This document shows, piece after piece, positions 33,096 through 62,453 of a stretch of DNA of 64,000 bases. This DNA is from Octopus sinensis. Taxonomy: Eukaryota. How positions within the stretch are numbered: the stretch's first letter is position 1; every line of letters begins with the position of its first letter. The stretch lies in contig NC_043010.1 in NCBI RefSeq assembly GCF_006345805.1, positions 20,212,001-20,276,000 on the forward strand, in the 5' to 3' direction. The notes beneath the pieces are model-generated. The model saw nothing but the letters and a program-made list of their open reading frames with translations. It did no database searches and had not been told where the DNA came from. The translations under genes were made by a program, and so were the position numbers.

Positions 33096-33151
<56 letters not shown>

Positions 33152-35380: not shown

Positions 35381-35728
35381 CTGAATGAAAAAAAAACAAA
35401 ACAAAAGAAACAAAAAAAAATTCCATCAAAATTTGGATTCCAAACACCAGATTAGATATCTTGCAAACAACTTGCACATGCAAGTGCTACCGGTTAAAAG
35501 CTCCGTATATCGGAAGCTAGCAAGTGTATGGAGTCATCAGGAGAGAATGCGCGCCGTTTCGGGGCCTACCTCTCGACGGCATCAATGCGCACCGGCCCCC
35601 CTCACTGATATGAGGCCCCGCTTGCTAGATCAGCTGGTTATGAAGAACTCAATATACTTCTAGCCATCGCTCATCGTCTCTTTTTAACCAAATCCAGTGG
35701 CTAGCCTATTTTTTACATTATTGCCTGT

Positions 35729-35995
35729 GGACTTATGGTGTGGTGGTTAAGAGCGTGGGCTACTAACCCCAAGATTCCGAGTTCAATTACAAGCAATGAC
35801 CTGAATAATAATAATATTAATAATAATAATAACATCAAAAAATACCTTAGGAATGAGAACCCAGGTTCAAAATTTCCCCAAGACACCTGATGAAGGCTGA
35901 AGGGTATACCAGCTGAAATGAAACGTGTTAACAACAACCAAGATGAGAACAAATATCCATCAAATGTAAATAATTCCTCATCTCTTAAATATAGA
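35729..35995 (+). mobile_element. tRNA-headed SINE with (AAT)n linker and hammerhead-like tail (uninterrupted copy)
   Basis: Head tggtgtggtggttaagagcg...gagttcaattac, then (AAT)n, then gacacCTGATGAaggctg...cagctGAAA. Confidence 0.7.
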
Positions 35996-37577: not shown

Positions 37578-39312
37578 TCATCATCATCATCATCATCATC
37601 ATCATTTAACGTCCACTTTCCATGCTAGCATGGGTTGGACGGTTCAACTGGGGTCTGGGGAGCCCGAAAGCTGCACCAGTCCAGTCAGATCTGGCAGTGT
37701 TTCTACAGCTGGATACCCTTCCTAACGCCAACCACTCCGAGAGTGTAGTGGGTGATTTTATGTGCCACCGACACAGGTGCCAGACGAGGCTGGCAAACGG
37801 CCACGCTCGGATGGTGTTTTTTTTTATGTGCCACCGACACAGGTGCCAGACGAGGCTGGCAGACGGCCACGCTCGGATGGTGTTTTTATGTGCCACCGAC
37901 ACAGGTGCCAGATGAGGCTGGCAAACGGCCACGATCGGATGGTGTTTGTTACGTGCCCACAGCACGGAGGCCAGTCGATGCGGTACTGGCTACGGCCACG
38001 TTCGGATGGTTTTCTTGTGTGCCACGTGCCACCGGCACTGGTACCACAAAGATACAAATTCCATTGATGTTCATCTATTTTGATTTGTTTTGATTTTCAC
38101 TTGCCTCACAGGTCTTCACAAGTGTCACAAGAAGGAAGGTATGCACAGGTGGACTGACTACGTCCCAGGTAGGGGCCACAGGTTATGGCCTGACTAGTCT
38201 TGCCGGGTCTTCGGATGGTGTTTTTATGTGCCACCGACACAGGTGCCAGATGAGGCTGGCGAACGGCCACGATCGGATGGTGTTTGTTACGTGCCCACAG
38301 CACGGAGGCCAGTCAGTGCGGTACTGGCTACGGCCACGTTCGGATGGTTTTCTTGTGTGCCACCGGCACTGGTACCACAAAGATACAATTCCATTAATGT
38401 TCATCTATTTTGATTTATTTGATTTGATTTGATTTGATTTGTTTTGATTTCATTTTGATTTTGATTTTCACTTGCCTCAACAGGCCTTCACAAGTATCAC
38501 AAGGAGGAAGGTATGCACAGGTGGACTGACTACGTCCCAGGTAGGGGCCATGGATATGGCCTGACTAGTCTTGCCGGGTCTTCGGATGGTGTTTTTATGT
38601 GCCACCGACACAGGTGCTAGATGAGGCTGGCGAACGGCCACGATCGGATGGTGTTTGTTATGTGCCCACAGCACGATGGCCAGTCGATGCGGTACTGACT
38701 ACGGCCACGTTCGGATGGATTTCTTGTGTGCCACAGGCACTGCTACCACAAAGATACAATTCCATTGATGTCATCTATTTTGATTTGATTTTGATTTTCA
38801 CTTGCCTCAACAGGTCTTCACAAGTGTCACAAGAAGGAAGGTATGCACAGGTGGACTGACTAGTCTTGCCGAGTCTTCGGAAGGTGTTTTTATGTGCCAC
38901 CGACACAGGTGCCAGATGAGGCTGGCGAACGGCCATGATCGGATGGTGTTTGTTACGTGCCCACAGCACGGAGGCCGGTCGATGCGGAACTGGCTACGGC
39001 CACGTTCGGATGGTTCTCTTGTGTGCCACCGGCACTGGTACCACAAAGATACAGATTCCATTGATGTTCATCTATTTTGATTTGTTTTGATTTTGATTTT
39101 GATTTTCACTTGCCTCAACAGGTCTTCACAAGTGTCACATGAAGGAAGGTATGCACAGGTGGACTGACTACGTCCCAGGTAGGGGCCATGGGTTATGGCC
39201 TGACTAGTCTTGCCGGGTCTTCGGATGGTGTTTTTATGTGCCACCGACACAGGTGCTAGATGAGGCTGGCGAACGGCCACGATCGGATGGTGTTTGTCAT
39301 GCGCCCACAGCA
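37578..39312 (-). mobile_element. Same non-autonomous family with a tandem array of 295-371-bp units
   Basis: Near-identical to 7153-8080. Unit anchors (tgccg(g/a)gtcttcgga) at 38201, 38572, 38867 and 39211. Confidence 0.85.
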
Positions 39313-40097
39313 CATATATATATATATATATATATTTGTATATATATATTTAAAATTTATAAGTTTAAATTATTTAAATAATTTTTAAATTTTTAACTTT
39401 TAGGTTTTTAAATTAATTTTATGTATTGGCTTATGTTTTTCACTGTTTGATTTGCCCAATAGTGGTTTTATCTCTAATTTAATATAATATATATATCGTC
39501 GTTCACCCGCGACATCACTTCCGCTGCTGTCTCTCTGGCCTGGCTCTTTCAAGGTAATCGACGACATTCTTTTTGCTCCGCTCGTCGTTCGTAAAAATTT
39601 CTGCGTTCGCTATACTTTTTTTCGTTCGGCGTTAACAGCCCTTCTTATCTTGTTTTTCCTTGTCCTGTTTTTTACTGTTTATAATTTGTACTGTCGTTAC
39701 TGTCCTGTTTTTGTTACCATTTTTTACCCCTCTGCGAAAAGATCTCAGAATTTTAATTGATTTGCTTTTCGCAGGAAGGAAAGTTTCTTGTCGAAGATAC
39801 GTCTCGCTTTTATCCTTCAAAACGTAGAGTAGATGAAACCTTTAGCGACTGAAGAAGGGGTTTTTTCTTTGTGTTAATTGTCCTGTACTCTATTTTTTTG
39901 CTGTTTTTAAAAAAATGTCCAGTTCCTTTGGTTTGTGTCTATGTTTTCGTTTCTCATTGTGTTCGACGTCCTTTTGGTGTCCTGTACTCATATATGCGTG
40001 TATATGTACATGTAGAGGTAAGTACCTACATATATGTTTATATATATGCATATGTTTTATTTTATTTATTAATATATATATATTATATAATATATAT

Positions 40098-40130
<33 letters not shown>

Positions 40131-40518
40131 ATATATATATACACACACATACATACATACATATCATCATCATCATCATCATCATCATCGTTTAACGTCC
40201 GTTTTCCGCGCTAGCACGGGTTGGACGGTTTCGACCGGGGTCTGGGGAGCTCGGGACTGCCCCAGGCTCCAGTCTAGTCTGGCAGTGTTTCTACAGCTGG
40301 ATGCCCTTCCTAACGCCAACCACTCCGCGAGTGTAGTGGGTGCTTTTTACGTGCCACCTGCACAGGTGCCAGAGGGGTCTGGCATCGGCCACGTTCGGAT
40401 GGTGCTTTTTATGTGTGTGTGGGGGGGTGCAGAAATATAGGGGAGCACCAGTGGGGAGGGGTGGTTCAGAGAAATGATGACAGGTTCTACATACATACAT
40501 ATATATATATATATATAA

Positions 40519-40564
<46 letters not shown>

Positions 40565-41691
40565 CTTATAAATACATATATATTATATATATATATATAT
40601 ATATAGATAGATAGATAGATATACATATACACATACATACATATTAATGGTCTTGATATTAATACAGCAGTATTAATTTATTGAAGAATTTTACCAAAGA
40701 GAAATGATTTGGAGAATGTGTAGTGAAACTGTGATTACCATATTAGGAAATAAAGTGGTTGTCTTTGGTCTTAATTAAATGTAAATAGAAGCTCACCCAC
40801 TAAAAGCATCCAGCCTCAATAATTAATATAATTATGGTGAGAAGATAATAGTAATAGGTTCCTGGTTTTGCTATATCTGTTTTAGAAAATTAAAGATTGG
40901 AATTGTTGCTATCAGATTTATCAAAATGGAAGCAGAGATTTATTTCCCTTTAACCAAATTCTTCATCAGCTTTTGCATTTTTACTGCTGCCTGCAAAATT
41001 CGGCAGACACACAAGTGAGTTCATGAGTATATAGTGATCTGGGCTTAGTAGATATTGATTTCCTTTGCAATCTGACTGATTAGTAAGCCTTCCTTTACTA
41101 ACATCCTATAAATTCCTACAGGCAATGCAGTGCAGTTAGTTACCCACCAACACACTGCTACCATTTCCTCACACACACACACACACACATTACAGCACTT
41201 CCCTACCACCAAACTTACCAATCTAAGGACTGCCGCCAATCAGTCGGCACTGCTTCTCTTCTCTACTCTGTGTAATAAAAAGGGAGAGATAACATTACAG
41301 TGTGTCTTACATTCTCTAAATCCATCCTTTGCCCTCCACTCCATTCCAAATTCCTCCAGCTAAAAGCAATTACCGAAATGAGTTGATCCAAGGAATTTCT
41401 GATTTGATCTTTTATGTATTCCTGTCATTGGATTGTGGCCATGCTGGGGCACTGCCTTGACAGGTTTAGTCAAAAATATCAATCCCAGCACTTATTATTA
41501 TTTTGAGTCTGGTACTTGTTCTATTATTCTCTTTTGTGAAACTGCTAAGTTACAGGGACATAACCAAACCAACATCAGTTGTTAAACAGCGATTGTGTGT
41601 GTGTATGTGTGATGGTGCAAGCACAAACACACATAAATACGATGAGCTTCTTTCAGTTTCCATTTACCAAATCCACTGACAAAGCTTAGGT

Positions 41692-42725
41692 TGTTTGATC
41701 AGGTTTGACTTGAGACTGACTCAGGGTTGACTCAAGGTTGACTCAAGGCTGACTCAGGGTAGATCAAGAAAAGTAACAGTAGCAACTGAAGTGGAAACCA
41801 ACCTGAGGTTGTAGAAAAAGACGCCCTGGGCACCACTTTGAGAAAATGTCTTCATCCTTAGTCCCAGGCCAACCATAGCCACACATATATGACTCCTTGC
41901 TCTTCCTCAAAGTTTAAACCCTAATTCTGAACCTGGCATCACATTTTTATCTCTGCAAGACCATCTGATCATTGTTTAATTAAGGCAGATCTTCACACCT
42001 TTTTAAAATCTAGAGGTGAGGAGTAGTGCTATGACCACATTCAGGACATCTGAGATGAGTAAAAAAGAAAGGAGGAATTCATTTTCAAACTAGACCAGGA
42101 GTGTACCCCACTAAAGGTACCCAAGGATCCGGTAAGGGCTAAAACTAGGGGATAGATGAGTGAATAAATGTTTCTTCTTGAAATTAATCAGGCAGGGCAA
42201 AATCTCTGCTAATTCTTACCTCTAGCTGTTGGTGTGCTTCTGGGGTCAGTGCTGCAGCATGGCACCTTGGGCAAGTGTCTTCTGTCAATAACCTTGGGCC
42301 AACCAAAGCCTTGTAAGTGGATTTGGTAAAGGGGAAACTGAAAAAAACCTGTTGTGTGTGGGTGTGTGTGTTTGTCCCCTGCCATACTTGATAGCTGGTG
42401 TTGGAGTGTTTACATCCCTGTAACTTTGCAGTTCGGCAAAAGTGACTGACAGAATAAGTACCAAACTTTAAAAAAAAAATATGTACTGGGGTTGATTCAT
42501 TCAATGAGAAATTCTTCAAGGCACTGCTCCAGCATGGCCACAGTCTAATGGATTGAACAAGCAAAAAATATAAGATAAAGCCATTGATAAAGCCTTTGCC
42601 AAACCATTGAGCTGTTTGATCAGGTTTGACTTGAGACTGACTCAGGGTTGACTCAAGGTTGACTCAAGGCTGACTCAGGGTAGATCAACAAAAGTAACAG
42701 TAGCAGTTGAAGTGGAAACCAACCT
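41692..42725. repeat. 113-bp direct repeat pair (41692-41804 and 42613-42725), each with four TGACTCA at 11-bp period
   Basis: Offset 921 with three mismatches. TGACTCA at 41717, 41728, 41739, 41750 and 42638, 42649, 42660, 42671. Confidence 0.9.
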
Positions 42726-42818
42726 TTAACCTGTCTCGGATTCTCCATACACTTTCTTTGTCTACCACTGAGTAACTAATAAAAACATGTGTCTTTGCTC
42801 TTGCACGGACCGTCTCCT
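42724..42818 (-). CDS. Internal exon D of ARM/TIR gene, start of TIR domain (KETVRARAKTHVFISYSVVDKESVWRIRDRLK)
   Basis: Long polypyrimidine tract plus ttacag|AG acceptor, donor AAG|gttggt. 95 nt, phase 1 to 0. HVFISYS is the TIR box-1 motif and it joins exon C in frame (A|AG). Confidence 0.85.
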
Positions 42819-43686
42819 CTGTAAAGAAGAAAGAAAAAAAACAGGAATTTCATTTTGGGATTGAATTTTCACTTTTTTAAAAATTTTGGAAATAATTTTT
42901 GTTTACAAAATAAAATGTCAGCAAATGGATTTCAAGGAGAATAATTTGAATAAAGGTCCTCCTTTTCAAGTCAGACAGACTCAGAAGTCTGTTAGTTTTT
43001 TTTTTTTTGGCGCATATATTTCCCTGCTTAGATGTGACACTGGTCTGTCACAGAATCACCCATTTTTCCTGAGGAGACTGGAGCTGGGTGAAATGAAGTG
43101 TTTTGCTCAAGAACACAATTCAGGAATCAAAACCACAACCTCACAATCATGGTTCCAACACCCAAACCACCAAGCCATGTATCTCCATGAGAATATGTAA
43201 AATATATTTAAAATAGATTTTTAAATAGAATTGGGAATTTTAAAAAGATTTATAAATATTTAGCAATAATTATTACTTTGAAACAGAATGTTAATCCTTT
43301 TGATATCAAGCCCCCAGAAATGGCCCCTAATTATCTGTTACGAACTGCCTGTTTAAGAATAATCTAAATCAATGGTTCTCAACTGGGGTCCATATGTCCC
43401 TTAGAATTTTGAAATTTAAACAGAGTTTTTAATTAATTTTCTGTAGAATTATAAATTTAGACAAAATTATGAATATCAAACAGAATTATAAACTTGAAAC
43501 AGAATTTTTAGTTTTAGACAGGCTTCTGAATTTTAAATAGAATTTTGAATTTTCTATAGAATTATAAATAACAAGATTTTAACCGTCCAAATAAAATTCA
43601 ATACTTTGAATATTGTTATCTATTTTGTTTTTTTGAAAAAAAGCATTAAACAGAAACAAAAGTGAGAAAGAAATGAAACATCTTAC

Positions 43687-43942
43687 TGTCAACCTCCGTT
43701 ACTTGTGTTGCTCCATTTAACAACCACAGCACCCCTTTAACATTTGCACTGACTAGTTTGTCTTTGTTGTCTTTGAGAGATTCCAGTAGTGTCACCAACG
43801 CTTGTTCATCATTTATTAACCTTTCGCGTACATTTTCGTCAAACATTAACGTCCACAGAATCCTTGCAGCTGAGCATTGTTCGCGGACGTCATCAAATTG
43901 TAACATACGACTTAGCATTGATAATATTCCACCATCCACAAT
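43687..43942 (-). CDS. Internal exon C of ARM/TIR gene, armadillo-like repeats (IVDGGILSMLSRMLQ...SAARILWTLMFDENV...NVKGVLWLL...EVD)
   Basis: Acceptor ttcttag|ATT and donor A|gtaaga. 256 nt, phase 0 to 1. AA..LW.L and KG.LW.L motifs are ARM helix-3-like. Confidence 0.9.
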
Positions 43943-44027
43943 CTAAGAATTAAAAAAAAAAAACAATATATACAACTGTAAAAAAAAGTGGTAAAGAAGA
44001 AAGAACACCAGTGACATCTAGGATTTT

Positions 44028-44735
44028 ATCTTTCATTATTAATTGCTTCAGTCTGTGGTCATTCTGGGGCAGTGCCTTGAAAATTTTGGTCAAATGAATC
44101 AACCCCAGTAGTTTTATTTGCTAAAGCTTGGCACTTATTCTATCAGTCTCTTTTGCCAAACTGCTAAGTTACTACTGTTTATGTAAACACACCAGCACTG
44201 GTTGTCAAGCAGTGGTGGGGGACAAACATTGGCAAACAGAAACACACACACACATGTATATATACATACATACACACAAATGCACATATATGCATACACA
44301 CACACACACACATATATTTACATACATACACACAAATACACATATATGCATACACACACACTCATACATATATATATATATATACACACACACTCATACA
44401 TATATATATACATACACACAAATACACATACATATTAGGAAGGGCATACATCGGTAAAAACCTTGCCAAAACAGACATAGAAGCCTGGTGCAGGCTCCTG
44501 CCTGGTGAGATCTTGTCAAACCGTCCAACCCATGCCAGCATGGAAAGCAGGCGTTAAAGGATGATGATGATGATGATGTGTTTCTTTCAGTTTCCGTCTA
44601 CCAAATCCACTCACAAGGCTTTGGTCGGCTTGAGGCTATAACAGAAGACACTTGCCCAAAGTGCCACGCAGTGGGACTGAACCTGAAACCATTTGATTTA
44701 GAAGCTTCTTAAATGCACAGCCAGGCCTATGCCCA
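44028..44735 (-). mobile_element. S1 SINE with a nested RTE-tail element at about 44447-44579
   Basis: The 3' half (44028-44230) and 5' half (44580-44735) of S1 are separated by (CA/TA)n and an oppositely oriented ttaggaagggc...gatgatgatg element. Confidence 0.7.
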
Positions 44736-45082
44736 GATGTTTCATATATTCTACAGAATTTCAAGATATTCTGTAAAAGTTTTTTTTTTTTCTAAGTAAC
44801 AGAGTTGCAGAAAGAAACAAACAAATTATGGTATTTAGCTGTGAACCTTCATATTCAGATTTCAAACCCTGCAGGGATCCTCTTTGTATTTATCTCTCCA
44901 GGGATCAATAGAATAAGTACTATTTGAGTACTATTTGGGGATAAGGGTCAACCTATTTGTTTCTGTTCTCCACAAAGATTATGTGCTATTTGAGGGCAGG
45001 AAAGGTGGGTCACTGCAACTGAGTAGGCCCCCAGCAAAAAAACATGGGACCTAATGCTTCTGTTAGAAGTAATGATTTATGA

Positions 45083-45345
45083 TAGAGGTTCCCAAACTTT
45101 ATCAGGCTGCCACCCCCTTGACACTCAGGCCACATTCCTCAAGCCCCCACCCCAACAAACCATCCCAAACATAAACCTCTTTCTGAAGCAAATTCAAAGC
45201 ATTTCACAAACATAATCTAACGAACCCATTATTTTATTGTTTTTACATGAATTGTTACTCCATTATTACCCCCACTTTTCCTCAATGCCCCCCTTGGAAC
45301 TTTTCACCCCCAGGGGAGCAATACTGCTCACTTTGGGAACCACTG
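45083..45345. mobile_element. hAT-type MITE
   Basis: TIRs TAGAGGTTCCCAAA / TTTGGGAACCACTG and a perfect 8-bp TSD ATTTATGA (45075-45082 and 45346-45353). Confidence 0.85.
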
Positions 45346-46604
45346 ATTTATGACTTCAAAGTACGCTGGACGAAATGCTCAGTGGTATTTCACCTGCAGC
45401 TATGTTCTGAGTTCAAATTCCGCTGAGGTCAAATTTGTCTTTTATCCTTTTGGGGTTGATAAATTAAGTTCCAGTCGAACGAATAAAGCATTAGACAAAA
45501 TACCTTATGGTAACTAAGCTGCATATCTTTAGGTTTTCAGTTCAAATCACATTAGGTCCAACATCCTTTACAGGGGTTCGTCAAGCTGAGTTCTAGTTCA
45601 GTTTCTGGGATTATCTAATCAACACTAATATTCATGTCCCAAATAGGAAGCGTCCTTGGGCTTGTATTAAAGATATCAATATTTACATCATGTTTGATAT
45701 GGAAAATATTTAATCTCTTTAACAGTTTAGCATTCAGATTCTTCTGTCAAATAGAATAATCCTTGTTCATTCCCATTGTCTTGAATTAATCCTGAATTAC
45801 CTTGTGGCTTTGAGATTTCAATGATGAGATTGTCTATTTTTAGAATGATACTGCAGGGTAGGTGTAAGAGGCCAGGCATAAAACATGAAACATGAAGAAT
45901 ATTTTGGGCTGGATACAGATGGTTTAAATGCTGAAGGGTTAAAGATCATCATCATCATCATCATCATCATCATTGCCCCCCACCCTCCTCTTCATCATCA
46001 TCAATGTTATCATCATTGCTATCATCATCATTACCATTGCCGTCATCATTGTCATCACCATCATCATCATCATCGTCATCATCATCACCACCACCATCAT
46101 CATCATCGTTTAACATCCGTTTTCTATCCTGGCATGGTTTGGATGGCTTGACTGGAGTTTGCAAGCTAGAGAACTGCATCAGTCCCTAGTTGTCTGTTTT
46201 GGCAAGGTTTCCATGGCTGGATGCCCTTCCGAATACCCACCACTTTACAGAGTGGACTGGGTGCTTTTTATGTGGCACCATCACCAGTGCTTCATATGTG
46301 ACACAGGTGTTTTAATGTGACTCCAGCATGGATGCTTTTCACGTGGCACCTGCCCTCTGAGTTAGCAAGACAGAGACCTCTCAACTGAGAGAGGGAATGA
46401 AACTAAAAGATGAGAGTCTGCTAGGGGAACAGAGGTAGCCCTCTTTCTGTTGAGGAGATACATGGTGACTCCTATAGGACAAACAAAGAGAGGAAGGTAG
46501 AAGAGAGTTAGAGAGAGAGATGGAGAGACTGAGAAAGAGAAGTCTTAATCTCAAAGAAGCATAAGTTTAATTCCTTCAGAATAAAGAACAGAATATGATC
46601 TTAA

Positions 46605-46771
46605 CCCTTTCGTTACCAACCCGGCTGAAACCGACTCTGGCTCTGAGTACAAATGTCTTGTTTCCATAAGTTTTGAAATAAAATTTTCCACCAAATCTTA
46701 GTCACAATTTATGTTCCTGATACTAACTGAATGATAACTAAGTTATTTTACTAAATTCAGTAATGAAAGGG
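46605..46771. mobile_element. piggyBac-type MITE
   Basis: TIRs CCCTTTCGTTAC / GTAATGAAAGGG with TTAA on both sides (46601-46604 and 46772-46775). Confidence 0.8.
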
Positions 46772-46786
46772 TTAAAGTAAGTTCAC

Positions 46787-46920
46787 CTTTAATTTGTTGG
46801 AATCTGTGACAGCCAACTTTTCCAGGCCTTGCACAATCTCGTATGGTGTGAAACCTTTGTATCGTCTTTTATTGCAGTCGAGAGCTTTATCAAGCCATTG
46901 GAGCATACACAAAATGCTCC
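46787..46920 (-). CDS. Internal exon B of ARM/TIR gene (GSILCMLQWLDKALDCNKRRYKGFTPYEIVQGLEKLAVTDSNKLK)
   Basis: Polypyrimidine tract plus ttcctcag|GG acceptor, donor AAG|gtgaac. 134 nt, phase 1 to 0. The GF..E...GL.KLAV.D.NK motif resembles invertebrate ARM-TIR proteins. Confidence 0.88.
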
Positions 46921-47152
46921 CTGAGGAAGAAATAAAAGTCGCGACAATCTTTATAAAACAAGCAAACATAAAAAAAAAGAAACAACAAAATCAAGTACAA
47001 AATTAACATGAAATGTTTAAATGTAGGGGCAGACGTGGCATTCATCATAGGCATAAGGTCAGGAATTTGTGTGGTAGGAGAAGGGTTGAGTAAATATACC
47101 TCAGCATATGACTGGTACTTACTTATGGACCCTCATACTCAGAAAAATGAAG

Positions 47153-48013
47153 GGGAACATGCTCTAGCTGGATTTGAACTCAGAATGTAAAGAAACATTA
47201 ATAAAATATTGCAAAGTATTTTGTCAGGTGCTCCACCAACTCTACTATTCATTATCTTAGTAGTAGTAGTGACAGTAGTAGTAGTAGTAATAGTAGTGGT
47301 GATGGTGGTGGTTGTAGTAGTAGTAGTAGTACTGGTGTTGGTGGTAGTAGTAGAAGTAGTATAGTAGTGGTGGTTGTGGTGGTAGAAGAAGTAGTAGTGG
47401 TGGTGATCGTTGTAGTAGAGTGGTGGTGGTGGTAGTATAGTAGTAGTAGTGTTGGTGGTAGTAGTAGTAGTGGTAGTAGTAGTAGAAGTAGTAGTGGTAG
47501 TAGTAGTGGTTGTTGTAGTAGTAGTGGTGGTGGTGGTAGTAGCAGTGGTAGTAATAGTAGTAGTGGTGGTGGTGGTAGTAGTAGTAGAAGTAGTAGTGGT
47601 GGTGGTGGTAGTAGTTAAGCAAGTGTGATACAAAGTGAATCAATAAGCTTACAAGTGAAGGATGTTCAACAGATAAGAAGTTATATTTTGGTTATTTATG
47701 AGGAAGACAGGGGGGGAGGGAGAGAGAGAGAGAAGGAGGGTGAAAGCATAAGAAGGTGTGTGTGTGTGTGTATATATATATGTATGTACATATGGCCCAG
47801 TGGTTAGGCTGTTGCATTCATGATCGCTAGATCGTGGTTTGATTTTCTGACTGGGTGGTGCATTGTATTCTTGAGCAAAACACTTCATTTCATCTTGCTC
47901 CAGTGCCCCTTTCAATCAGGGGGGAATGTTAGCCTGCTTGCCTTGCCAGCAGCATGATGTCATTTAAGGCTAAAACAATGTACAATGTAACCAGTGATGT
48001 ATCATGTGATCAT

Positions 48014-48074
<61 letters not shown>

Positions 48075-49202
48075 AGAATTAAAAAAAAAAAAGACGAAGA
48101 CAGGTGGTGTAGACATTATATATATATATATATTATATATATATATTATATATATAATGTTTACGGAAACATGAAACTCAGAGTAACAGGTTTTGTTGAT
48201 TTTCTGCTGCTTTAAATAAAGCATATTACTCTACCACTGATATTTGAGTACTCTTTTTTCCACCTTGTTTCACATTTATGTGTTTACTCCGGTATATATA
48301 ATATATATATATATTATATATATATATGCTAGATCATGGGAACATGCTCTAGCTGGATTTGAACTCAGAATGTAAAGAAACATTAATAAAATATTGCAAA
48401 GTATTTTGTCAGGTGCTCCACCAACTCTACTATTCATTATCTTAGTAGTAGTAGTGACAGTAGTAGTAGTAGTAATAGTAGTGGTGATGGTGGTGGTTGT
48501 AGTAGTAGTAGTAGTACTGGTGTTGGTGGTAGTAGTAGAAGTAGTATTAGTAGTGGTGGTTGTGGTGGTAGAAGAAGTAGTAGTGGTGGTGATCGTTGTA
48601 GTAGTAGTGGTGGTGGTGGTAGTAATAGTAGTAGTAGTGTTGGTGGTAGTAGTAGTAGTGGTAGTAGTAGTAGAAGTAGTAGTGGTAGTAGTAGTGGTTG
48701 TTGTAGTAGTAGTGGTGGTGGTAGTAGTAGAAGTAGTATAAGTTGTGGTGGTGGTGGTAGTAGCAGTGGTAGTAATAGTAGTAGTGGTGGTGGTGGTAGT
48801 AGTTAAGCAAGTGTGATACAAAGTGAATCAATAAGCTTACAAGTGAAGGATGTTCAACAGATAAGAAGTTATATTTTGGTTATTTATGAGGAAGACAGGG
48901 GGGGAGGGAGAGAGAGAGAAGGAGGGTGAAAGCATAAGGAAGGTGTGTGTGTGTGTGTATATATATATATGTATGTACATATGGCCCAGTGGTTAGGCTG
49001 TTGCATTCATGATCGCTAGATCGTGGTTTGATTTTCTGACTGGGTGGTGCATTGTATTCTTGAGCAAAACACTTCATTTCATCTTGCTCCAGTGCCCCTT
49101 TCAATCAGGGGGGAATGTTAGCCTGCTTGCCTTGCCAGCAGCATGATGTCATTTAAGGCTAAAACAATGTACAATGTAACCAGTGATGTATCATGTGATC
49201 AT

Positions 49203-49245
<43 letters not shown>

Positions 49246-49287
49246 AGAATTAAAAAAAAAAAAAAGACGAAGACAGGTGGTGTAGAC

Positions 49288-49329
<42 letters not shown>

Positions 49330-50475
49330 GTTTACGGAAACATGAAACTCAGAGTAACAGGTTTTGTTGAATTTTCTGCTGCTTTAAATAAAGCATATTA
49401 CTCTACCACTGATATTTGAGTACTCTTTTTTCCACCTTGTTTCACATTTATGTGTTTACTCCGGTATATATATATATATATTATATATATATATGCTAGA
49501 TCATGGGAACATGCTCTAGCTGGATTTGAACTCAGAATGTAAAGAAACATTAATAAAATATTGCAAAGTATTTTGTCAGGTGCTCCACCAACTCTACTAT
49601 TCATTATCTTAGTAGTAGTAGTGACAGTAGTAGTAGTAGTAATAGTAGTGGTGATGGTGGTGGTTGTAGTAGTAGTAGTAGTACTGGTGTTGGTGGTAGT
49701 AGTAGAAGTAGTATTAGTAGTGGTGGTTGTGGTGGTAGAAGAAGTAGTAGTGGTGGTGATCGTTGTAGTAGTAGTGGTGGTGGTGGTAGTAATAGTAGTA
49801 GTAGTGTTGGTGGTAGTAGTAGTAGTGGTGTTGGTGGTAGTAGTAGTGGTGGTAGTAGTAGTAGAAGTAGTAGTGGTAGTAGTAGTGGTTGTTGTAGTAG
49901 TAGTGGTGGTGGTAGTAGTAGAAGTAGTATAAGTTGTGGTGGTGGTGGTAGTAGCAGTGGTAGTAATAGTAGTAGTGGTGGTGGTGGTAGTAGTTAAGCA
50001 AGTGTGATACAAAGTGAATCAATAAGCTTACAAGTGAAGGATGTTCAACAGATAAGAAGTTATATTTTGGTTATTTATGAGGAAGACAGGGGGGGAGGGA
50101 GAGAGAGAGAGAAGGAGGGTGAAAGCATAAGGAAGGTGTGTGTGTGTGTGTATATATATATATGTATGTACATATGGCCCAGTGGTTAGGCTGTTGCATT
50201 CATGATCGCTAGATCGTGGGTTCGATTCTCTGACTGGGTGGTGCATTGTATTCTTGAGCAAAACACTTCATTTCATCTTGCTCCAGTGCCCCTTTCAATC
50301 AGGGGGGAATGTTAGCCTGCTTGCCTTGCCAGCAGCATGATGTCATTTAAAGGCTAAAACAATGTACAATGTAACCAGTGATGTATCATGTGATCATGTG
50401 ATATATAATATATATATATATATATATATAGGGAGAATTAAAAAAAAAAAAAAGACGAAGACAGGTGGTGTAGAC

Positions 50476-50521
<46 letters not shown>

Positions 50522-50654
50522 GTTTACGGAAACATGAAACTCAGAGTAACAGGTTTTGTTGAATTTTCTGCTGCTTTAAATAAAGCATATTACTCTACCA
50601 CTGATATTTGAGTACTCTTTTTTCCACCTTGTTTCACATTTATGTGTTTACTCC

Positions 50655-50693
<39 letters not shown>

Positions 50694-50700
50694 TAGATCA
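47153..50700. repeat. Tandem triplication of an approximately 1.17-1.2-kb unit containing (GTA/GTG)n, a SINE fragment and (TA)n
   Basis: gggaacatgctctagctggatttg anchors at 47153, 48338 and 49505, with the third copy ending tgctagatca at 50700. Confidence 0.92.
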
Positions 50701-50861
50701 GTAGCCACTACACACATTTTTTTCTCTCCTTGTTTTTTCTGTGTAGAAGAGCGTAGGCTTGAAACGTAAAAGACTTTTTCAATTCCTGAGCATTATACTA
50801 ATACATCTGTTTATTTTGTACACACCCTGTCTTCGTCTTTTGCTTTTTTCGTGAATTTGCC

Positions 50862-50902
<41 letters not shown>

Positions 50903-51316
50903 CAATATGGAGCAAATAATTCATGAGAAAATAATTTGCAAAGATATCACTGACTCTATTATTATCTAGTGTAACAATTTTAAAATTATGATAACAGAAT
51001 CAATAATATAGACGATTGCAGGCCCCCAAAATAAATATATATATAAGAAGTTGGACAAGGGAATAAGAAATTATATCATGAATTTCATAGCTTATAGCTG
51101 TTTCTGTTACAAGGTTCAATGCACTCATCTCCCTATAGCTTCATTAGAGCTTCAAATACAAAATGCTGAAACAGCTGTAAGCTAAATAAAGTCCATAAGT
51201 GTTTCTTCCTTTGTCATTCTAATTTCTTATTACTGCTCTGTCCGTGATTAACACTTCTTTCTGACACGTTTGTATACTGAGTTCTGGTACCAGGTGATTA
51301 GTATCACTATGTTTAA

Positions 51317-51318
<2 letters not shown>

Positions 51319-51363
<45 letters not shown>

Positions 51364-51469
51364 AATGATAATGATAATGATAATAGTAATAATGATAATA
51401 ATAATGATAATAATAATGATAATAGTAATAATAACAATAATGATGATGATAATGATAATAATAATGATG

Positions 51470-51506
<37 letters not shown>

Positions 51507-51623
51507 TGATGATAATAATGATGATAATAATAATACTAATAATAATAATGATAATAATAATACTAATAATAATAATGATAATGAAAATAATGATAAAAAT
51601 AACAACAACAACAACAACAACAA
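51319..51623. repeat. (AAT/GAT/AAC)n trinucleotide tract
   Basis: Direct inspection. Confidence 0.9.
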
Positions 51624-51645
51624 TATATATATATATATTGTATTT

Positions 51646-51988
51646 CAGGATGGTCATTGTTCTTTTTTTTTTTTGCCAAATAAACACATGCACTGTGTAT
51701 TTGTTCTTCACTCATTTATTATTGTTCTTATTCTAACTCTTGTCCATTGTCCGGAAATCTTTTGTCACACACCAGTGACCTCTCCAGCGACACTTTCCAT
51801 CTTTGTGTGTGCTCTTGCTCCGCTTAGTCCATTCTCAGATAATGGAAGAGGTCACAGACATGTGATGAAAGACTTCTGGACAATGGACATGAGTTAGAAT
51901 AAGAACAGTAATAAATGAGTGAAGAACGAATAAATCGTGCATGTGTTTATTTGGAAAAGAACAAAAAAAAAAAAAGAAGACTATCCCT
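51646..51988. mobile_element. Foldback/MITE with about 135-bp imperfect inverted arms
   Basis: aaataaacacatgcac...ttcttcactcattta...ttgtccattgtcc is mirrored by ggacaatggaca...taaatgagtgaagaa...gtgcatgtgtttattt. Confidence 0.75.
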
Positions 51989-52358
51989 AAGTACAAAATC
52001 TGTTTCAACACACAGTTTCACATTATGAATCTTACAACACTAATTCATAAATGGGTATATATATAATAAATGTGGCTAGATACAATATAACATCAAAAAG
52101 GAAGACTTCAGTTCTCACTAATAGTGACTGAGGGTCCATTGTAGCACCTACATTGCTAGAAATAAGTGTCAAGACCCTTGTAGCCACAAACATAGCACAG
52201 GTCTATGTACTGATAGGAGAGTTAACTGCCCCATAGTAAGCGAATGTGGTAAATTGGCATGTCAGTTTCGCTTGAAATCAAAGCTCATCAGTATTACTAC
52301 TACATTGCTTGTAGTTAAGTCAAATCCTCTTGTCAGTAGATAGATTATTACCATAAGA

Positions 52359-52411
<53 letters not shown>

Positions 52412-52469
52412 ACACACACACACACACAAAGAGAGAGATAGAGAAGAAATAATGAAAATGCAGCCTCAC

Positions 52470-52581
52470 CAGTTTCCTCAATTAATGTCTGGTTGTCTTC
52501 CTCTTCAACGATGTATGCCATAGTCATCATAGATAGGACCTTAAACATTTCATCTTTTGAAGAAATAAATGTCTGAATCAC
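52470..52581 (-). CDS. Internal exon A of ARM-repeat/TIR-domain gene (VIQTFISSKDEMFKVLSMMTMAYIVEEEDNQTLIEETG)
   Basis: Acceptor tttcag|GTG at 52581 and donor G|gtgagg at 52470. 112 nt, phase 0 to 1, joining exon B in frame (G|GG AGC). Confidence 0.85.
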
Positions 52582-53057
52582 CTGAAAGTTGATAATGAGC
52601 AGCAAATGTTTATGGGGGACATAATGATAATGATGATCATGATGATGATAATGATGAAGATGATGATAACAATAGTAATAATTATTATAATAATACCCTC
52701 CAAACTGCTGACCAATTACATGTCTAACAGCTATATCTAAAATACTAACATCCATCATTACTGACAATATGTACCACTTTCCTGACGGATAACAAGATAT
52801 TCCCCCGTGAACAAAAAGGTTGTTAACATGGCTCCTATGGTTGTGGAGACCAACTTTTAATCAATAAAATGGTTCTTGAGGACTGACATGAACAATGCTA
52901 GAATCTTTTTATTGCATGGATTGATTACAAAAAATATACAAAAAACTGTTCAACAACCATTCCCCCATAGCTGGATTGAGAAATTCTTGGATATGAATAA
53001 AATTTCTCCATTTACTGGTATTTTTATGTTGAATAGCATAAAGCAATGGGTAAGAAC

Positions 53058-53620
53058 TCTTATCATCATCATTGTTCGACTGTGGTCGAGACAATGGAAT
53101 TTACTATGTTATGCCAGACTTCATGGTCCATCATGGCATTATGGAGGTCCTGTTGCTGGATGCCTGTATCCCTGGAGATTACACCAGGGTAGGAGAGTGT
53201 GTGCCCTCTGGTATTGTGAGTAGATGGCTTCCAGAGGAGAAGAGTAGAAATTACCTCGTTTTCAGCTCTACAACAATGTCCAGCAAACTGGACTCTTCTC
53301 CCTTTCACAAGATGATACAGGTAGTAGTTTCCTATATATTTGTACTTTGGTTGGATGACGCTTCCACAAGAGATTTTGAGCTCTCATAAGGAGGCGAGTG
53401 TAAGTTCCATCCAACCGCCTCTCAAGCTTCTTTGATAACGTCCAGGTTTCTGAGCCATATAGTAGAATTGGTTTGACTGTGGCTTTGAAGATTTTAAGTT
53501 TGAAATCTCTACTTAGATTTGATGACCAGATCTTATGTATATCATTACAGGCTGACCAGGCCATACCCTTTCTAGTTAGAAAATATTTTTCAGATGATGA
53601 TATGTATGACAAGTTCTATG
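53058..53620 (-). mobile_element. RTE-type LINE 3' fragment with frameshift
   Basis: AWSAC...IW.S...K.KIFKATV.PILLYGSETWTL...RLDGTYTRLL then RRVQFAGHC, ending in a (GAT)n tail at about 53060. Confidence 0.8.
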
Positions 53621-53769
53621 AACACTGGTGATGCAGATGTAAACTGCAGCATCTCTCAAAGTGATTCTCTGTTACCATTACTCTTTTGAATGAGTTCTTT
53701 CTCTCCTAAGTAATCTGCTGATTAACCAATCATTGACAGGTCACATTTGTATCAAGAATCACTGGGGCC

Positions 53770-53885
53770 TTACTGATTTTAAATCCTTGATGTCGGTAGA
53801 CTTGTCTATCTCTATATTGTTTGTTTTTAGGAGTTTTTCACTTGAAGAATGTGGCTTTAGCACATTTATCAAAGTTTAGGGGTAT
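53770..53885 (-). mobile_element. Short degenerate R4/Dong RT fragment
   Basis: LNFDKCAKATF.../KTNNIEIDKSTDIKDL parallels FGLEKCAKVTLKRGKLVKSSNITLDKTNEIKEL. Confidence 0.5.
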
Positions 53886-54077
53886 GTGAAAGGGATGGGC
53901 ATCCAGCAAAAAAAAAAAAACCCAAAAAGACCGGAAAGAATATTATTGTAGGACTAGAGCTACCCAAAAGAATAAACAGGATTGATACAATCAATATCTT
54001 AGCTGTTGTGACCTTCAGCATAAAATGCAGCATAAAAGGGGCCATCTGTGGGATCAATAAAATTGATAATTACACAT

Positions 54078-54648
54078 GGTCCTCACAGTGCATCACTTAT
54101 ATAACTGAAAAGCAAATGTAGAAAGACTATACATCCTAGAAAAGGGTGGAGGACATGGACTGATGCAGCTGCAACTGTCTCTAAAGCTAGCAACCAAAGA
54201 GGGAGAGACCTGTTTAAAGAACGCCAGTGGCTGGATACTTAAACTTGTCTGCAAATTATGAAAGTTCATAAAGAGAGTTCTCAGTATGAGAAGAAACAAA
54301 GAAGTATGCAAAGAAATTAAAAATGAACGAGACTGAGGAGAGACTTAATGAAAGAGATTAATGAAAGAGAAGAAGCAACTGTGATAAAGGAAACTGATAA
54401 AAACACAAACCAAACCAAATGGATTCTCAGAGCTGCAAAATAGATGAAGTAAGGCATTGCTTGACAAATATCCTACAAGGACCAGTGATCCTTGATACAA
54501 ATATGACCCACTCAGGATCTGTGTCTGCCCACCACAAACTGCCAAGAAAGGATCATAAAAATGGTGCTGATCCTGCCTGCCAGACTATCATCCACCCCGA
54601 AAATTTCAGGCCTTGTGCCTATAGCAGAAAGGATTATCATTACTATTT

Positions 54649-54743
<95 letters not shown>

Positions 54744-55047
54744 CAGTACGTTATCAAAGTGATGCTGGGGTACAAATATATGAAGCCCAATATCTTGACT
54801 ACCCATCTGATAAGGGTACACCAAGCACATGCATCACAACCATATGTACACGACATGGTGATCCAATATCATGATAAATAGTTTAAGTATCCAGCCACTG
54901 GCGTTCTTTAGACAGGTCTCTCCCTCTTTGGTTGCTAGCTTTAGAGACAGTTGCAGCTGCATCAGTCCATGTCCTCCACCCTTTTCTAGGATGTACACTC
55001 TATCTACATTTGCCTTTCAGTTATATAAGTGATGCACTGTGAGGACC
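54078..55047. repeat. 167-bp inverted repeat pair (54078-54244 and 54881-55047)
   Basis: ggtcctcacagtgcatcac...ggatacttaaac versus gtttaagtatcc...gtgatgcactgtgaggacc, with about five mismatches. Confidence 0.9.
54105..54520 (+). mobile_element. Degenerate R4/Dong fragment
   Basis: KANVERLYILEKGGGHGLMQLQL...WILKLV parallels KSDIERLYIQPIEGGRGLIQLE. Confidence 0.55.
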
Positions 55048-56560
55048 TTGCAAGTAGGACCTAGTTAGAATTTTCTAACTCAAGCTGAACTCTGCTCCAC
55101 AGCAGAAGTGTTAAGGCTGCTCTCCCCGATGAAGAGGGGTGGCCTGCAAGGGTCCTGTGCTGGTGTTATGTAAACAGCACTTATGCTGGTCCTGTGTAAA
55201 AGCAACTGTGCAGTGCCACATTACGAGAACCCAACACACACTGTAAAGTGGTTGGCATTAGGAAAGGCCCTTAGCTGTTGAAAAACCAAGCCAAATCAGA
55301 CAAGAACCTGGTGTAGCCCCTCCAGCTTGCCAGCTCTGGTCAATCTGTCCAACCCATGCCAGCATGGAAAACAGATGTTAAATGATTATCATTATCATTA
55401 TTATAATTATTCATTGTTTAACATCCGCTTTTCCTGCTGGCATGGGTTGGATGGTTTGACTGAGGGCTGGTGAGCCAGAGGCTGCACCAGGCTCAATCTC
55501 ATCTGACAAAGTTTCTGCAGCTGGATGCCCTTCCTAATGCCAACCACTCCGAGAGTGTAATAATAAGGTGGTGAGCTGGCAGAATCATTAGCACGCTGAT
55601 GACATTTTGTCCATTTTTATGTTCTGAGTTCAAATTGTGCTGAGGTCAACGTTGCTTTTTATCTTTTCAGGGTCGATAAAATAAGTACCAGCCGAGCATC
55701 AGGGTTGATGTAATCAACTTATCCTGCCCGCCTGAAATTGCTGGCCTTGTGCCAAACTTTGCAATCATCATCATCATCATCATCATCATCATTATTATTA
55801 TTATTATTTTTGGTATCGATATTATTTGTATTTTCAGTCTTTATCTAATTTGTCTGAGTGGTGTCCCTCTTACCCATCACCCTTGAGGCAAATAAATGAA
55901 TTCTTATCCTCCTCCTCCTACGACTAAATATTAATATTTTTGTTTTTTATTTGCCCAGAAGGCAATGGATGGATTCCGAATGCAATTTACATTATCATAA
56001 AGTAAAAATAAACAAACCAAAAAAAGAAAAAAAACAATAGCAAAACCAACAACAAAAAAAAACCCTGCATCAGTCTTTAATAGAAGCAGTTTTATTTATA
56101 TTTTTTTTATTTTTATAGAATTATTTTTTTTGTTATTTCATTATTTTATTTTTATTCTTATTTCTTTATTCGTGCCAAGTTAATAGAATAATGTGAGATT
56201 AAAGCACATTAAGGCAGACAATAGAAAATATGGTCATGTAGAAAAACAGGAATTGTAATATAGGTTTGTTGCATGTTTTAACAGAGTTTCCAGCTTCACT
56301 TCCACAGTTTAACAGTAGCAGCAGCAGCAGTAGTAGTACTAGTAGTAGTAGTAATACTAGCAGTAGTATTTGTATTAAATAGTTGTAGCAGCAATTCTAA
56401 TAACAGTAGTAGTGGTAATTGTTGCAGTTATGATATTATTATTATTATTATTACTATTATTATTATCATCATCATCATTATTATCATTATTAGCATTATT
56501 ATTATTATTATTGAGTGAGAGAGCAGTGCATGCCATTTTATTATTATTATTATTATTATT

Positions 56561-60514: not shown

Positions 60515-60586
<72 letters not shown>

Positions 60587-60602
60587 TCATTAGCAGTAGT
60601 TT

Positions 60603-62240: not shown

Positions 62241-62453
62241 TGTTGTCGCAGTAACAATACTTAAACAGTATGGTGGAAATGTTAGTCGTGATGGTGGTTG
62301 TGGTTGCTATAGTAATGGTATAAAGATTCTGGCTGTAGTTTGATGGAAATAGTTACAGTAGCCATAAAGTGGTAGTTTAGACTAAAGTAGAGTGGTGGTT
62401 ATCGTTATTGTAGTATAGGTTCTAGTCTCATCTGTTGTACAGTAATGTCTTTA

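What the first reader, a model, noticed from the sequence alone, without database searches (positions are those of the whole stretch)
42724..52581. Hidden spliced ARM-repeat plus TIR-domain gene on the minus strand
Four short exons buried in repeats join at GT-AG sites with matching phases (0-1, 1-0, 0-1, 1-0) into about 199 contiguous aa: VIQTFISSKDE...LAVTDSNKLKIVDGGILSML...KGVLWLL...KTHVFISYSVVDKESVWRIRDRLK. The TIR box-1 exon (42818-42724) is absent from the ORF track. The splicing is seen in the sequence. From established knowledge, ARM-TIR proteins (SARM1-like but lacking the SAM domains between ARM and TIR) occur in several invertebrate lineages, and SARM1's TIR is an NADase. That this is a cephalopod innate-immune or NADase-type gene is inference.
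Basis: partly seen in the sequence, partly recalled or inferred. Interest (0 to 1): 0.72.

Follow-up and report, generated by a model that had tools for sequence, protein, structure and literature searches.

The report
Four exons of octopus ARM-TIR-SAM gene
The four spliced exons are real, but they are the middle of an already annotated and still uncharacterised octopus gene (LOC106868605 / LOC115218870) for a SARM1-like protein with its domains in a different order; this is a correct call, not a new gene.

Summary
Four minus-strand exons (52581-52470, 46920-46787, 43942-43687, 42818-42724) have AG/GT borders and phases 0-1, 1-0, 0-1, 1-0. They join into 199 codons with no stop.

The peptide equals residues 234-432 of RefSeq XP_014769431.1, "uncharacterized protein LOC106868605 isoform X1" of Octopus bimaculoides (664 aa). 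The O. sinensis/vulgaris orthologue LOC115218870 contains the same 199 residues.

All four exon borders fall at the same position and phase in a bivalve and a gastropod orthologue. An mRNA contig from another cephalopod covers the 199 aa without a gap.

The annotated gene spans about 100-117 kb, and the evidence points to the window lying inside it. No other part of the protein is in the window: not the first 233 residues, not the catalytic part of the TIR (Glu480), not the C-terminal SAM-like domain. The intron after the TIR box-1 exon is therefore longer than 42.7 kb.

The full protein reads ARM repeats, one TIR_2 domain, then one SAM-like domain. That is SARM1's domain set in another order, and it is not a SARM1 orthologue. 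Relatives occur in molluscs, an annelid and a crinoid. The function is untested. NAD+-cleaving activity is plausible because the Glu is conserved, but it is inferred.

Already known; low interest.

The parts
52470..52581 (-). Coding exon A (112 nt, phase 0 to 1). It encodes residues 234-271 of the 664-aa protein, an ARM-repeat helix (VIQTFISSKDE...LIEETG).
   Evidence: AG/GT borders. Family profile E 4.8e-10. Same exon borders and phase in Potamilus and Batillaria. Exact match to P0087.
46787..46920 (-). Coding exon B (134 nt, phase 1 to 0), residues 271-315, ARM region (SILCMLQWL...TDSNKLK).
   Evidence: Profile E 5.3e-15. Conserved intron positions. Exact match to P0087.
43687..43942 (-). 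Coding exon C (256 nt, phase 0 to 1), residues 316-401: two ARM repeats and the start of the linker (IVDGGILSML...TQVTEVD).
   Evidence: Profile E 1.2e-24. The same exon with identical borders sits on genomic contig L001 of another cephalopod, with pN 0.17 against pS 0.75. That exon is present exactly in mRNA contig L005.
42724..42818 (-). Coding exon D (95 nt, phase 1 to 0), residues 401-432: the ARM-TIR linker plus TIR strand A (HVFISYS, box 1) and helix A. It ends at RDRLK|gt.
   Evidence: Profile E 2.5e-6. An intron at the same position and phase follows RLK/RLR in Potamilus and Batillaria. Pfam TIR_2 starts at residue 412 of P0087. The AF2 model has strand 411-415 and helix 418-433.
46921..52469 (-). 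Intron between exons A and B (5.5 kb). It is filled with three tandem units of about 1.17-1.19 kb and with (TAG/TGG)n and (TAA)n microsatellites.
43943..46786 (-). Intron between exons B and C (2.8 kb), holding SINE-like and microsatellite repeats.
42819..43686 (-). Intron between exons C and D (0.87 kb).
1..42723 (-). First 42.7 kb of the intron that follows exon D. It holds no further exon of this gene, only SINEs, reverse-transcriptase fragments and a GA-rich satellite. The next TIR exon (EEGYQLWIDVD...) lies beyond the window.
   Evidence: tblastn with ten homologues and with P0087 finds nothing. The C-terminal family profile has no hit better than E about 1 on either strand. There are no N runs. 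The annotated gene range is 100.7 kb.
52582..64000 (-). Last 11.4 kb of the intron that precedes exon A. It contains a non-LTR retrotransposon (60137-56731, minus strand) and no exon for residues 1-233.
   Evidence: The N-terminal profile has no hit. RVT_1 6.7e-30 and zf-RVT.

Best explanation
The four pieces are consecutive internal coding exons of an annotated Octopus gene: LOC106868605 in O. bimaculoides, LOC115218870 in O. sinensis/vulgaris. They encode residues 234-432 of a 664-aa cytosolic protein. The protein is built as a disordered N-terminus, about 320 residues of armadillo repeats, one TIR_2-type TIR domain, a disordered linker, and one C-terminal SAM-like domain.

Shown: the exons, their splice sites, their identity to the annotated protein, the conservation of their borders across molluscs, and the domain content of the full protein. 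The window most likely lies inside the gene's 100-117 kb span. It carries the C-terminal half of the ARM solenoid and only the first strand and helix of the TIR.

Inferred, by analogy with SARM1 and other enzymatic TIRs, is how it works. The SAM-like domain would oligomerise the protein. The ARM domain would hold the TIR inactive or sense a ligand. Clustered TIR domains, which keep the invariant Glu480 at the catalytic position, would then cleave NAD+ (NADase or cyclic-ADPR-type signal production) in an innate-immune or cell-injury response. A purely scaffolding, adaptor role for the TIR is the main alternative.
For: - Splice sites, phases and an open 199-codon frame.
- ARM identity: Vac8 6e-12. 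With the family profile, Vac8 1.8e-22 and beta-catenin 1e-14.
- Exon C alone retrieves ARM-TIR proteins of gastropods, bivalves, an annelid and a crinoid from 1.84 billion representatives. All have Pfam TIR_2 at E 1e-22 to 1e-25.
- The family profile hits exactly the four exons.
- The exon borders and phases are identical in Potamilus (L003) and Batillaria (L004), including the intron after RLK.
- The peptide is 100% identical, at 100% coverage, to XP_014769431.1. It is an exact substring at 234-432, and is also contained in the O. sinensis/vulgaris proteins.
- The gene range is 100.7 kb in O. bimaculoides and 117 kb in O. vulgaris.
- mRNA contigs L005/L006 encode the whole 652-aa orthologue of another cephalopod in one open frame. 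The 199 aa align to it ungapped at 80%.
- Purifying selection on exon C: pN 0.17, pS 0.75.
- Full protein: TIR_2 412-530 at 3.9e-22, and SAM_3/SAM_1/SAM_2 below threshold at 595-630.
- A profile of the TIR-SAM half hits the SARM1 SAM1 region at about 1e-6 and the NADase Cat1 TIR at 2.5e-8. Glu480 aligns to the Glu of Cat1's CWDE and of SARM1's HKE motif. The Glu is invariant in 9 of 9 aligned relatives.
- The AF2 model (pLDDT 71) shows an ARM solenoid, an alpha/beta TIR and a helical C-terminal bundle. Full-length SARM1/TIR-1 chains are among the top Foldseek hits.
- Non-TLR animal TIRs, some on ARM-containing proteins, made cADPR in a Glu-dependent way when expressed in E. coli (bioRxiv 10.64898/2026.04.20.719644).
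Against: - None of the catalytic part of the TIR, nor the SAM-like domain, is in the window. Everything about them comes from the annotated protein and its relatives.
- I could not fetch the genomic DNA of the full locus because the gene range is too long. That the downstream exons lie just beyond the window is therefore deduced, not seen.
- No Octopus RNA-seq reads were examined. The transcript evidence is from another cephalopod plus the RefSeq model.
- The SAM-like domain is below Pfam thresholds in Octopus (E 0.014).
- The TIR part of the model has only moderate confidence (pLDDT 53-84).
- No member of this family has been assayed, as far as the searched literature shows.
- One relative (Patella, P0046) has T in place of the Glu.
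Confidence: 0.93

Rival explanations
1. The four exons are a truncated relic, a pseudogene fragment. On this view the TIR was cut off after box 1 by repeat insertions, and the GT donor of exon D was supplied by the repeat that begins there.
For: No further TIR or SAM exon exists in the 42.7 kb downstream, nor any N-terminal exon in the 11.4 kb upstream. A 113-115-bp element begins exactly at the AG|GT of exon D. It recurs 97% identical about 920 bp downstream, next to SINE copies.
Against: The intron after RLK sits at the same position and phase in a bivalve and a gastropod, so the donor is ancestral. The 199 codons have no stop or frameshift and match the family profile strongly. The annotated Octopus proteins carry exactly these residues followed by a complete TIR and a SAM-like domain, in genes of 100-117 kb. 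That leaves room for an intron longer than 42.7 kb.
Confidence: 0.03
2. The protein is a non-enzymatic TIR adaptor. Its TIR only docks onto other TIR proteins (Toll-like receptors, MyD88-like adaptors), and ARM and SAM serve as scaffolds. This is what was hypothesised for the conserved invertebrate TIR-domain families.
For: Invertebrate-wide conserved TIR-domain families have been proposed to act as adaptors or regulators of immune signalling (PMC6321704 and PMC6836662, both citing Gerdol et al. 2017). A conserved Glu alone does not prove catalysis.
Against: The Glu at the catalytic position is invariant in nine of nine aligned relatives, with only Patella differing. The closest solved TIR by sequence is a bacterial NADase, Cat1, not a TLR or MyD88 TIR. 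No death domain, LRR or transmembrane segment is found.
Confidence: 0.35
3. It is the octopus orthologue of SARM1 / dSarm / TIR-1.
For: It has the same three domain types. Its SAM-like domain's best match is SARM1's SAM1. Full-length SARM1 chains are among the top structural hits.
Against: The domain order is ARM-TIR-SAM with one SAM, not ARM-SAM-SAM-TIR. The family profile matches the SARM1 TIR only at E about 0.06, against 2.5e-8 for Cat1. The Foldseek TM-score to SARM1 is about 0.2.
Confidence: 0.03

Closest known systems
Octopus bimaculoides LOC106868605 (XP_014769431.1, isoform X1, 664 aa; UniProt A0A0L8HV44 for isoform X3) and Octopus sinensis/vulgaris LOC115218870
   Same: The 199-aa spliced peptide is identical to residues 234-432. 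This is the gene itself.
   Different: Nothing differs in the part present. The window holds only four internal exons. The three isoforms differ only at the N-terminus, outside the window. The 199 residues cannot tell which Octopus species the window comes from.
Uncharacterised ARM-TIR-SAM 'TIR domain-containing proteins' of other spiralians and a crinoid, for example Batillaria KAK7481464.1, Potamilus KAK3578382.1, Biomphalaria LOC106059582, Mytilus LOC143052497, Owenia CAH1783289.1 and Anneissia LOC117104068
   Same: Collinear at 33-47% identity over the 199 aa. The exon borders and phases match in the two genomes examined. The architecture is the same, and the C-R-x-E motif is invariant in nine of nine aligned relatives.
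   Different: The N-terminal tails and the TIR-SAM linker diverge. The Patella protein lacks the Glu. The genes are shorter: 17.7 kb in Batillaria and 72.5 kb in Potamilus, against 100-117 kb in Octopus.
SARM1 / C. elegans TIR-1 / Drosophila dSarm (NAD+ hydrolase)
   Same: ARM repeats, SAM and TIR in one cytosolic protein. The Glu at the catalytic TIR position is conserved. The SAM-like domain is most similar to SARM1's SAM1.
   Different: The domain order is permuted (ARM-TIR-SAM) and there is one SAM instead of two. The TIR sequence is not SARM1-like (E 0.06). This is not an orthologue. The octamer ring and NMN/NAD+ allostery are unknown here.
Cat1, the CRISPR-associated TIR NADase (PDB 9mud), and other TIR_2-type enzymatic TIRs (plant RPS4 TIR, bacterial TIRs)
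   Same: Cat1 is the closest solved TIR by sequence: 2.5e-8 over strand A to helix C, including the C-x-x-E Glu.
   Different: Cat1 is a bacterial protein with a different partner domain. The similarity is confined to the TIR core.

Membership tests
Octopus LOC106868605 / spiralian ARM-TIR-SAM family | Collinear sequence match of the ARM half and TIR box 1 to family members | tested here: met
   The family profile hits the four exons at E 4.8e-10, 5.3e-15, 1.2e-24 and 2.5e-6, at abutting, slightly overlapping profile positions. The peptide is an exact substring of XP_014769431.1, residues 234-432.
Octopus LOC106868605 / spiralian ARM-TIR-SAM family | Shared intron positions and phases | tested here: met
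   Both borders of exons A to D (eight junctions, five intron positions) coincide in position and phase with Potamilus L003 and Batillaria L004.
Octopus LOC106868605 / spiralian ARM-TIR-SAM family | Complete TIR_2 domain after the ARM repeats | tested here: met
   Met on the annotated protein: TIR_2 412-530, 3.9e-22. In the window itself only residues 412-432 (strand A, helix A) are encoded. The rest is absent from the window.
Octopus LOC106868605 / spiralian ARM-TIR-SAM family | C-terminal SAM-like domain | tested here: inconclusive
   Pfam SAM_3 is below threshold in Octopus (E 0.014) and just above it in Mytilus (22.9 against a cut-off of 22.6). The family profile hits SARM1's SAM1 at about 1e-6. 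The AF2 model has a helical bundle at 590-660 with pLDDT 75-86. This region is encoded outside the window.
SARM1 / TIR-1 / dSarm orthologues | Domain order ARM, SAM, SAM, TIR | tested here: not met
   The order is ARM, TIR, then a single SAM-like domain.
SARM1 / TIR-1 / dSarm orthologues | TIR domain most similar to the SARM1 TIR | tested here: not met
   The family profile against SARM1 TIR chains gives E about 0.06, against 2.5e-8 for Cat1 and 1e-3 for RPS4.
SARM1 / TIR-1 / dSarm orthologues | NMN/NAD+-regulated NAD+ hydrolase activity and an octameric SAM ring | not testable with these tools
   This needs biochemistry and structure determination.
Enzymatic (NAD+-cleaving) TIR domains | Glutamate at the catalytic position (C/W-x-x-E of helix C) | tested here: met
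   Glu480 of P0087 aligns with the Glu of Cat1's CWDE and of SARM1's HKE. It is invariant in nine of nine aligned relatives. It is encoded outside the window.
Enzymatic (NAD+-cleaving) TIR domains | Measured NAD+ consumption or cADPR-isomer production | not testable with these tools
   No assay of this family was found in the searched literature.
TLR / MyD88-type TIR receptors and adaptors | LRR ectodomain with a transmembrane segment, or a death domain, next to the TIR | tested here: not met
   Pfam finds only ARM-type, TIR and weak SAM matches on the Octopus and related proteins.

The most novel reading that the evidence does not exclude
The ARM-TIR-SAM family would be a second, domain-permuted, SARM1-like NAD+-cleaving sensor. 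It would have been kept across spiralians and some echinoderms and lost from vertebrates and the standard invertebrate models. Octopus Glu480-dependent catalysis would be switched on by SAM-driven oligomerisation, in immunity or neuronal injury. Nothing here excludes this, and nothing here tests it. The catalytic exons lie outside the window.
Probability: 0.3. Interest if true: 0.5.

Novelty: already known. Interest (0 to 1): 0.15.

Why it matters
For the scan, this is a clean positive control. A reader working from raw sequence recovered four short exons, with their splice phases, of a real gene scattered over 10 kb of repeats, and named both domains correctly. The gene itself is not new: it has RefSeq and UniProt entries and clear orthologues.

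The open question is biological. No member of this ARM-TIR-SAM family has a known function, yet it keeps the catalytic-type glutamate of NAD+-cleaving TIRs and a SARM1-like SAM domain. That question belongs to the whole family and is not made more testable by this window, which lacks the catalytic exons.

Tried and rejected
- **Word-indexed homologue search with the 199-aa peptide.** It found nothing at E <= 1e-3. This was a sensitivity limit of the index, not absence. The same database returned the 100% identical Octopus protein when queried with a family alignment.
- **Pfam on the 199 aa alone.** It gave no TIR hit, because 21 residues of TIR are too few.
- **Searches for the rest of the TIR downstream.** Motif searches, reading of open frames, tblastn with ten homologues and with the Octopus protein, and N- and C-terminal family profiles with HMMER filters off all came back negative on both strands.
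- **Truncated pseudogene.** Considered and rejected.
- **Donor created by the repeat that starts at it.** Rejected, because the intron is ancestral.
- **Look-up of a window ORF in public assemblies.** Not on record.
- **Fetching the full locus DNA from O. bimaculoides and O. vulgaris.** The gene range was too long, so no DNA was returned.
- **Species assignment.** The 199 aa are identical in O. bimaculoides and O. sinensis/vulgaris, so the species is left open.
- **Assignment to a numbered ecTIR-DC family of Gerdol et al. 2017.** That paper is not in the library, and the papers citing it describe other architectures.


Full report
**Observation**

Reading the minus strand at the given coordinates shows four open segments, each bordered by a polypyrimidine tract with AG upstream and by GT downstream.

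- Exon A is 52581-52470 (112 nt).
- Exon B is 46920-46787 (134 nt).
- Exon C is 43942-43687 (256 nt).
- Exon D is 42818-42724 (95 nt).

Exon C must end at GACA|gtaaga to keep the frame. With that donor the phases are 0-1, 1-0, 0-1, 1-0. The window is AT-rich eukaryotic DNA, full of microsatellites, SINE-like repeats and reverse-transcriptase ORFs.

**Is it more than chance, and what is it?**

The 199 aa match solved armadillo-repeat proteins (Vac8, 6e-12). Pfam gives only sub-threshold ARM models and no TIR hit, because only about 21 TIR residues are present.

A first word-indexed homologue search found nothing. An exhaustive HMMER search with exon C alone, against 1.84 billion representative proteins, gave 71 hits. 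The long hits are 374-664-aa proteins of gastropods (Batillaria, Biomphalaria, Patella, Candidula, Plakobranchus), bivalves (Potamilus, Mytilus), an annelid (Owenia) and a crinoid (Anneissia). All are unnamed or labelled "TIR domain-containing". The six that were scanned each carry a Pfam TIR_2 domain at 1e-22 to 1e-25 directly after the ARM region. The 199 aa align to them collinearly at 33-47% identity, ending in the family's H-V-F-I-S-Y-S TIR box.

A profile built from these relatives hits exactly the four exons in a six-frame translation of the window. The E-values are 4.8e-10, 5.3e-15, 1.2e-24 and 2.5e-6, at profile positions 1-38, 31-83, 83-167 and 168-199.

**Splice model**

I mapped two relatives onto their own genomic loci. 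In Potamilus streckersoni (L003) and Batillaria attramentaria (L004), the exons homologous to A, B, C and D have the same borders and the same phases. This includes the phase-0 intron right after ...RDRLK / ...RERLR, which splits the TIR after helix A.

That settles one worry. A 113-115-bp element begins exactly at the AG|GT of exon D. It recurs about 920 bp downstream at 97% identity, and both copies abut SINE-like repeats. So the donor might have come from a repeat. The conserved intron shows that it is ancestral.

A genomic contig of another cephalopod (L001) carries exon C with identical borders. Comparison with the window gives pN 0.17 against pS 0.75, which indicates purifying selection. 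mRNA-derived contigs (L005, L006; a 1959-nt open frame on contigs of 3.2-3.3 kb) encode the whole 652-aa orthologue of that lineage. Its 90%-identity cluster includes a Sepia (Acanthosepion) pharaonis protein. The window's 199 aa align to it in one ungapped stretch at 80% identity. L001's exon C is present in it exactly, and the identity ends within a base or two of the exon borders.

**Identity**

Searching the large protein collection with the family alignment returned P0087, [quoted passage not shown] (XP_014769431.1, 664 aa). It is 100% identical over 100% of the peptide, and the 199 aa are its residues 234-432 exactly.

The same 199 residues occur in isoforms X2 and X3, which differ only at the N-terminus, and in the O. 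sinensis/vulgaris orthologue LOC115218870. The species within Octopus therefore cannot be fixed from this peptide. Orthologues exist in Argonauta hians (85%) and in decapodiforms (76%).

So the gene is annotated. It is hidden only from an ORF track.

**Where is the rest?**

tblastn with ten relatives and with the Octopus protein, and profiles of the N-terminal 212 and C-terminal 221 family positions run with HMMER filters off, find no other piece of the gene on either strand of the window. The window has no gaps.

The annotated gene spans 100.7 kb in O. bimaculoides and 117 kb in O. vulgaris. Exons A-D take up 9.9 kb of the window, with 11.4 kb of intron upstream and 42.7 kb downstream. The window therefore fits inside the gene, and the intron after exon D exceeds 42.7 kb.

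I could not fetch the locus DNA because the range is too long. The position of the next exon is thus deduced, not seen. The truncated-pseudogene reading is rejected for three reasons: the annotated full-length proteins, the ancestral donor, and four exons with no stop or frameshift that strongly match the family profile.

**The protein and how it probably works**

Pfam on the full Octopus protein gives TIR_2 at 412-530 (3.9e-22), ARM models over 203-384, and SAM_3/SAM_1/SAM_2 below threshold at 595-630. The Mytilus relative passes the SAM_3 threshold.

A profile of the TIR-to-C-terminus half of nine family members gave these hits among solved structures (single-sequence version):

| Target | E-value |
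|---|---|
| Cat1, a CRISPR-associated TIR NADase | 2.5e-8 |
| SAM1 region of SARM1 and C. elegans TIR-1 | about 1e-6 |
| SEFIR | 3e-4 |
| Plant RPS4 TIR | 1e-3 |
| SARM1 TIR | about 0.06 |

In these alignments the family's invariant C-R-x-E glutamate lines up with the Glu of Cat1's CWDE and with the Glu of SARM1's HKE motif. In Octopus this is Glu480; it is E in nine of nine aligned relatives, and T in Patella. From established knowledge, that position is the catalytic glutamate of NAD+-cleaving TIRs.

An AlphaFold2 model has mean pLDDT 71:

- residues 1-64 are disordered;
- residues about 70-390 form an ARM solenoid at pLDDT 80-94;
- residues 411-538 form an alpha/beta TIR;
- residues 539-590 are a disordered linker;
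- residues 590-660 form a helical bundle.

Foldseek against the PDB returns armadillo proteins and full-length SARM1/TIR-1 chains at about 2e-6. The TM-score is only about 0.2, as expected if the domains are the same but arranged differently.

The most likely working model is inferred from this: a SARM1-like logic of SAM-mediated oligomerisation, an ARM domain that restrains or senses, and Glu480-dependent NAD+ cleavage or cyclic-ADPR-type signalling. A recent preprint reports that diverse non-TLR animal TIRs, including ones on ARM-containing proteins and one from a mollusc, make cADPR in a Glu-dependent way in E. coli (10.64898/2026.04.20.719644). It does not identify this family.

The main rival model is a non-catalytic adaptor, as hypothesised for the conserved invertebrate TIR families (PMC6321704, PMC6836662). 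I rate enzymatic against adaptor as roughly even, slightly favouring enzymatic.

**Comparison with the known**

This is the gene LOC106868605 / LOC115218870. It belongs to an uncharacterised ARM-TIR-SAM family of spiralians and at least one echinoderm. It works like SARM1 in domain content, but it is not a SARM1 orthologue: the order is ARM-TIR-SAM with one SAM, and the TIR is not SARM1-type. It lacks the LRR, transmembrane and death-domain features of TLRs and MyD88.

**Verdict**

Novelty: already known. Interest: low. It is chiefly a demonstration that the first-stage reading can recover real split genes.

Noticed in passing
window about 42725-42612 and about 41804-41691 (minus strand): A 113-115-bp element with internal ~11-bp GAGTCA-containing repeats (CCTGAGTCAGC / CTTGAGTCAAC) starts exactly at exon D's AG|GT donor. 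It is repeated 97% identical about 920 bp downstream. Each copy is followed by a SINE-like repeat, in opposite orientations. The second copy is preceded by a good polypyrimidine/AG acceptor. Its origin, local duplication or part of a mobile element, was not resolved.
   Followed up: partly
window 47116-50700: Three tandem units of about 1.17-1.19 kb lie inside the intron between exons A and B. Copies 2 and 3 are identical over the 300-nt reference segment compared, and copy 1 is 76% identical to it. Each unit contains a 360-385-bp (TAG/TGG)n microsatellite and SINE-like sequence.
   Followed up: partly
window 15636-19977 (also about 12200-13000): A GA-rich satellite with periods of 15 and 47 bp explains the extreme GC and AT skew at 12-20 kb. 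It produces very long spurious ORFs on both strands.
   Followed up: partly
window 56731-60137 (minus strand): A largely intact non-LTR retrotransposon sits in the intron upstream of exon A. It has a 238-aa first ORF with no Pfam hit, a 628-aa ORF with RVT_1 (6.7e-30) and a 239-aa ORF with zf-RVT. It lies in the same orientation as the host gene.
   Followed up: partly
window 3851-5020 (minus strand) and 27017-27706 (minus strand): Further retroelement remnants. One is a 390-aa ORF with the C-terminal half of RVT_1 plus a PHD finger. The other is a 230-aa ORF that looks like the C-terminal part of a reverse-transcriptase ORF but has no Pfam hit.
   Followed up: partly
outside the window (O. 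bimaculoides record): The annotated gene range of LOC106868605 contains a nested 329-aa, apparently intronless gene with a Frizzled (Fz) cysteine-rich domain, on the same strand, about 29 kb from the gene start. No such ORF is in this window.
   Followed up: no
L001 3829-4014 (another cephalopod's genomic contig): An Integrase_H2C2 fragment, a retroelement remnant, lies about 3 kb downstream of the orthologous exon C. No exon D orthologue lies within 4 kb, so that intron is longer there than the 0.87 kb in Octopus.
   Followed up: no
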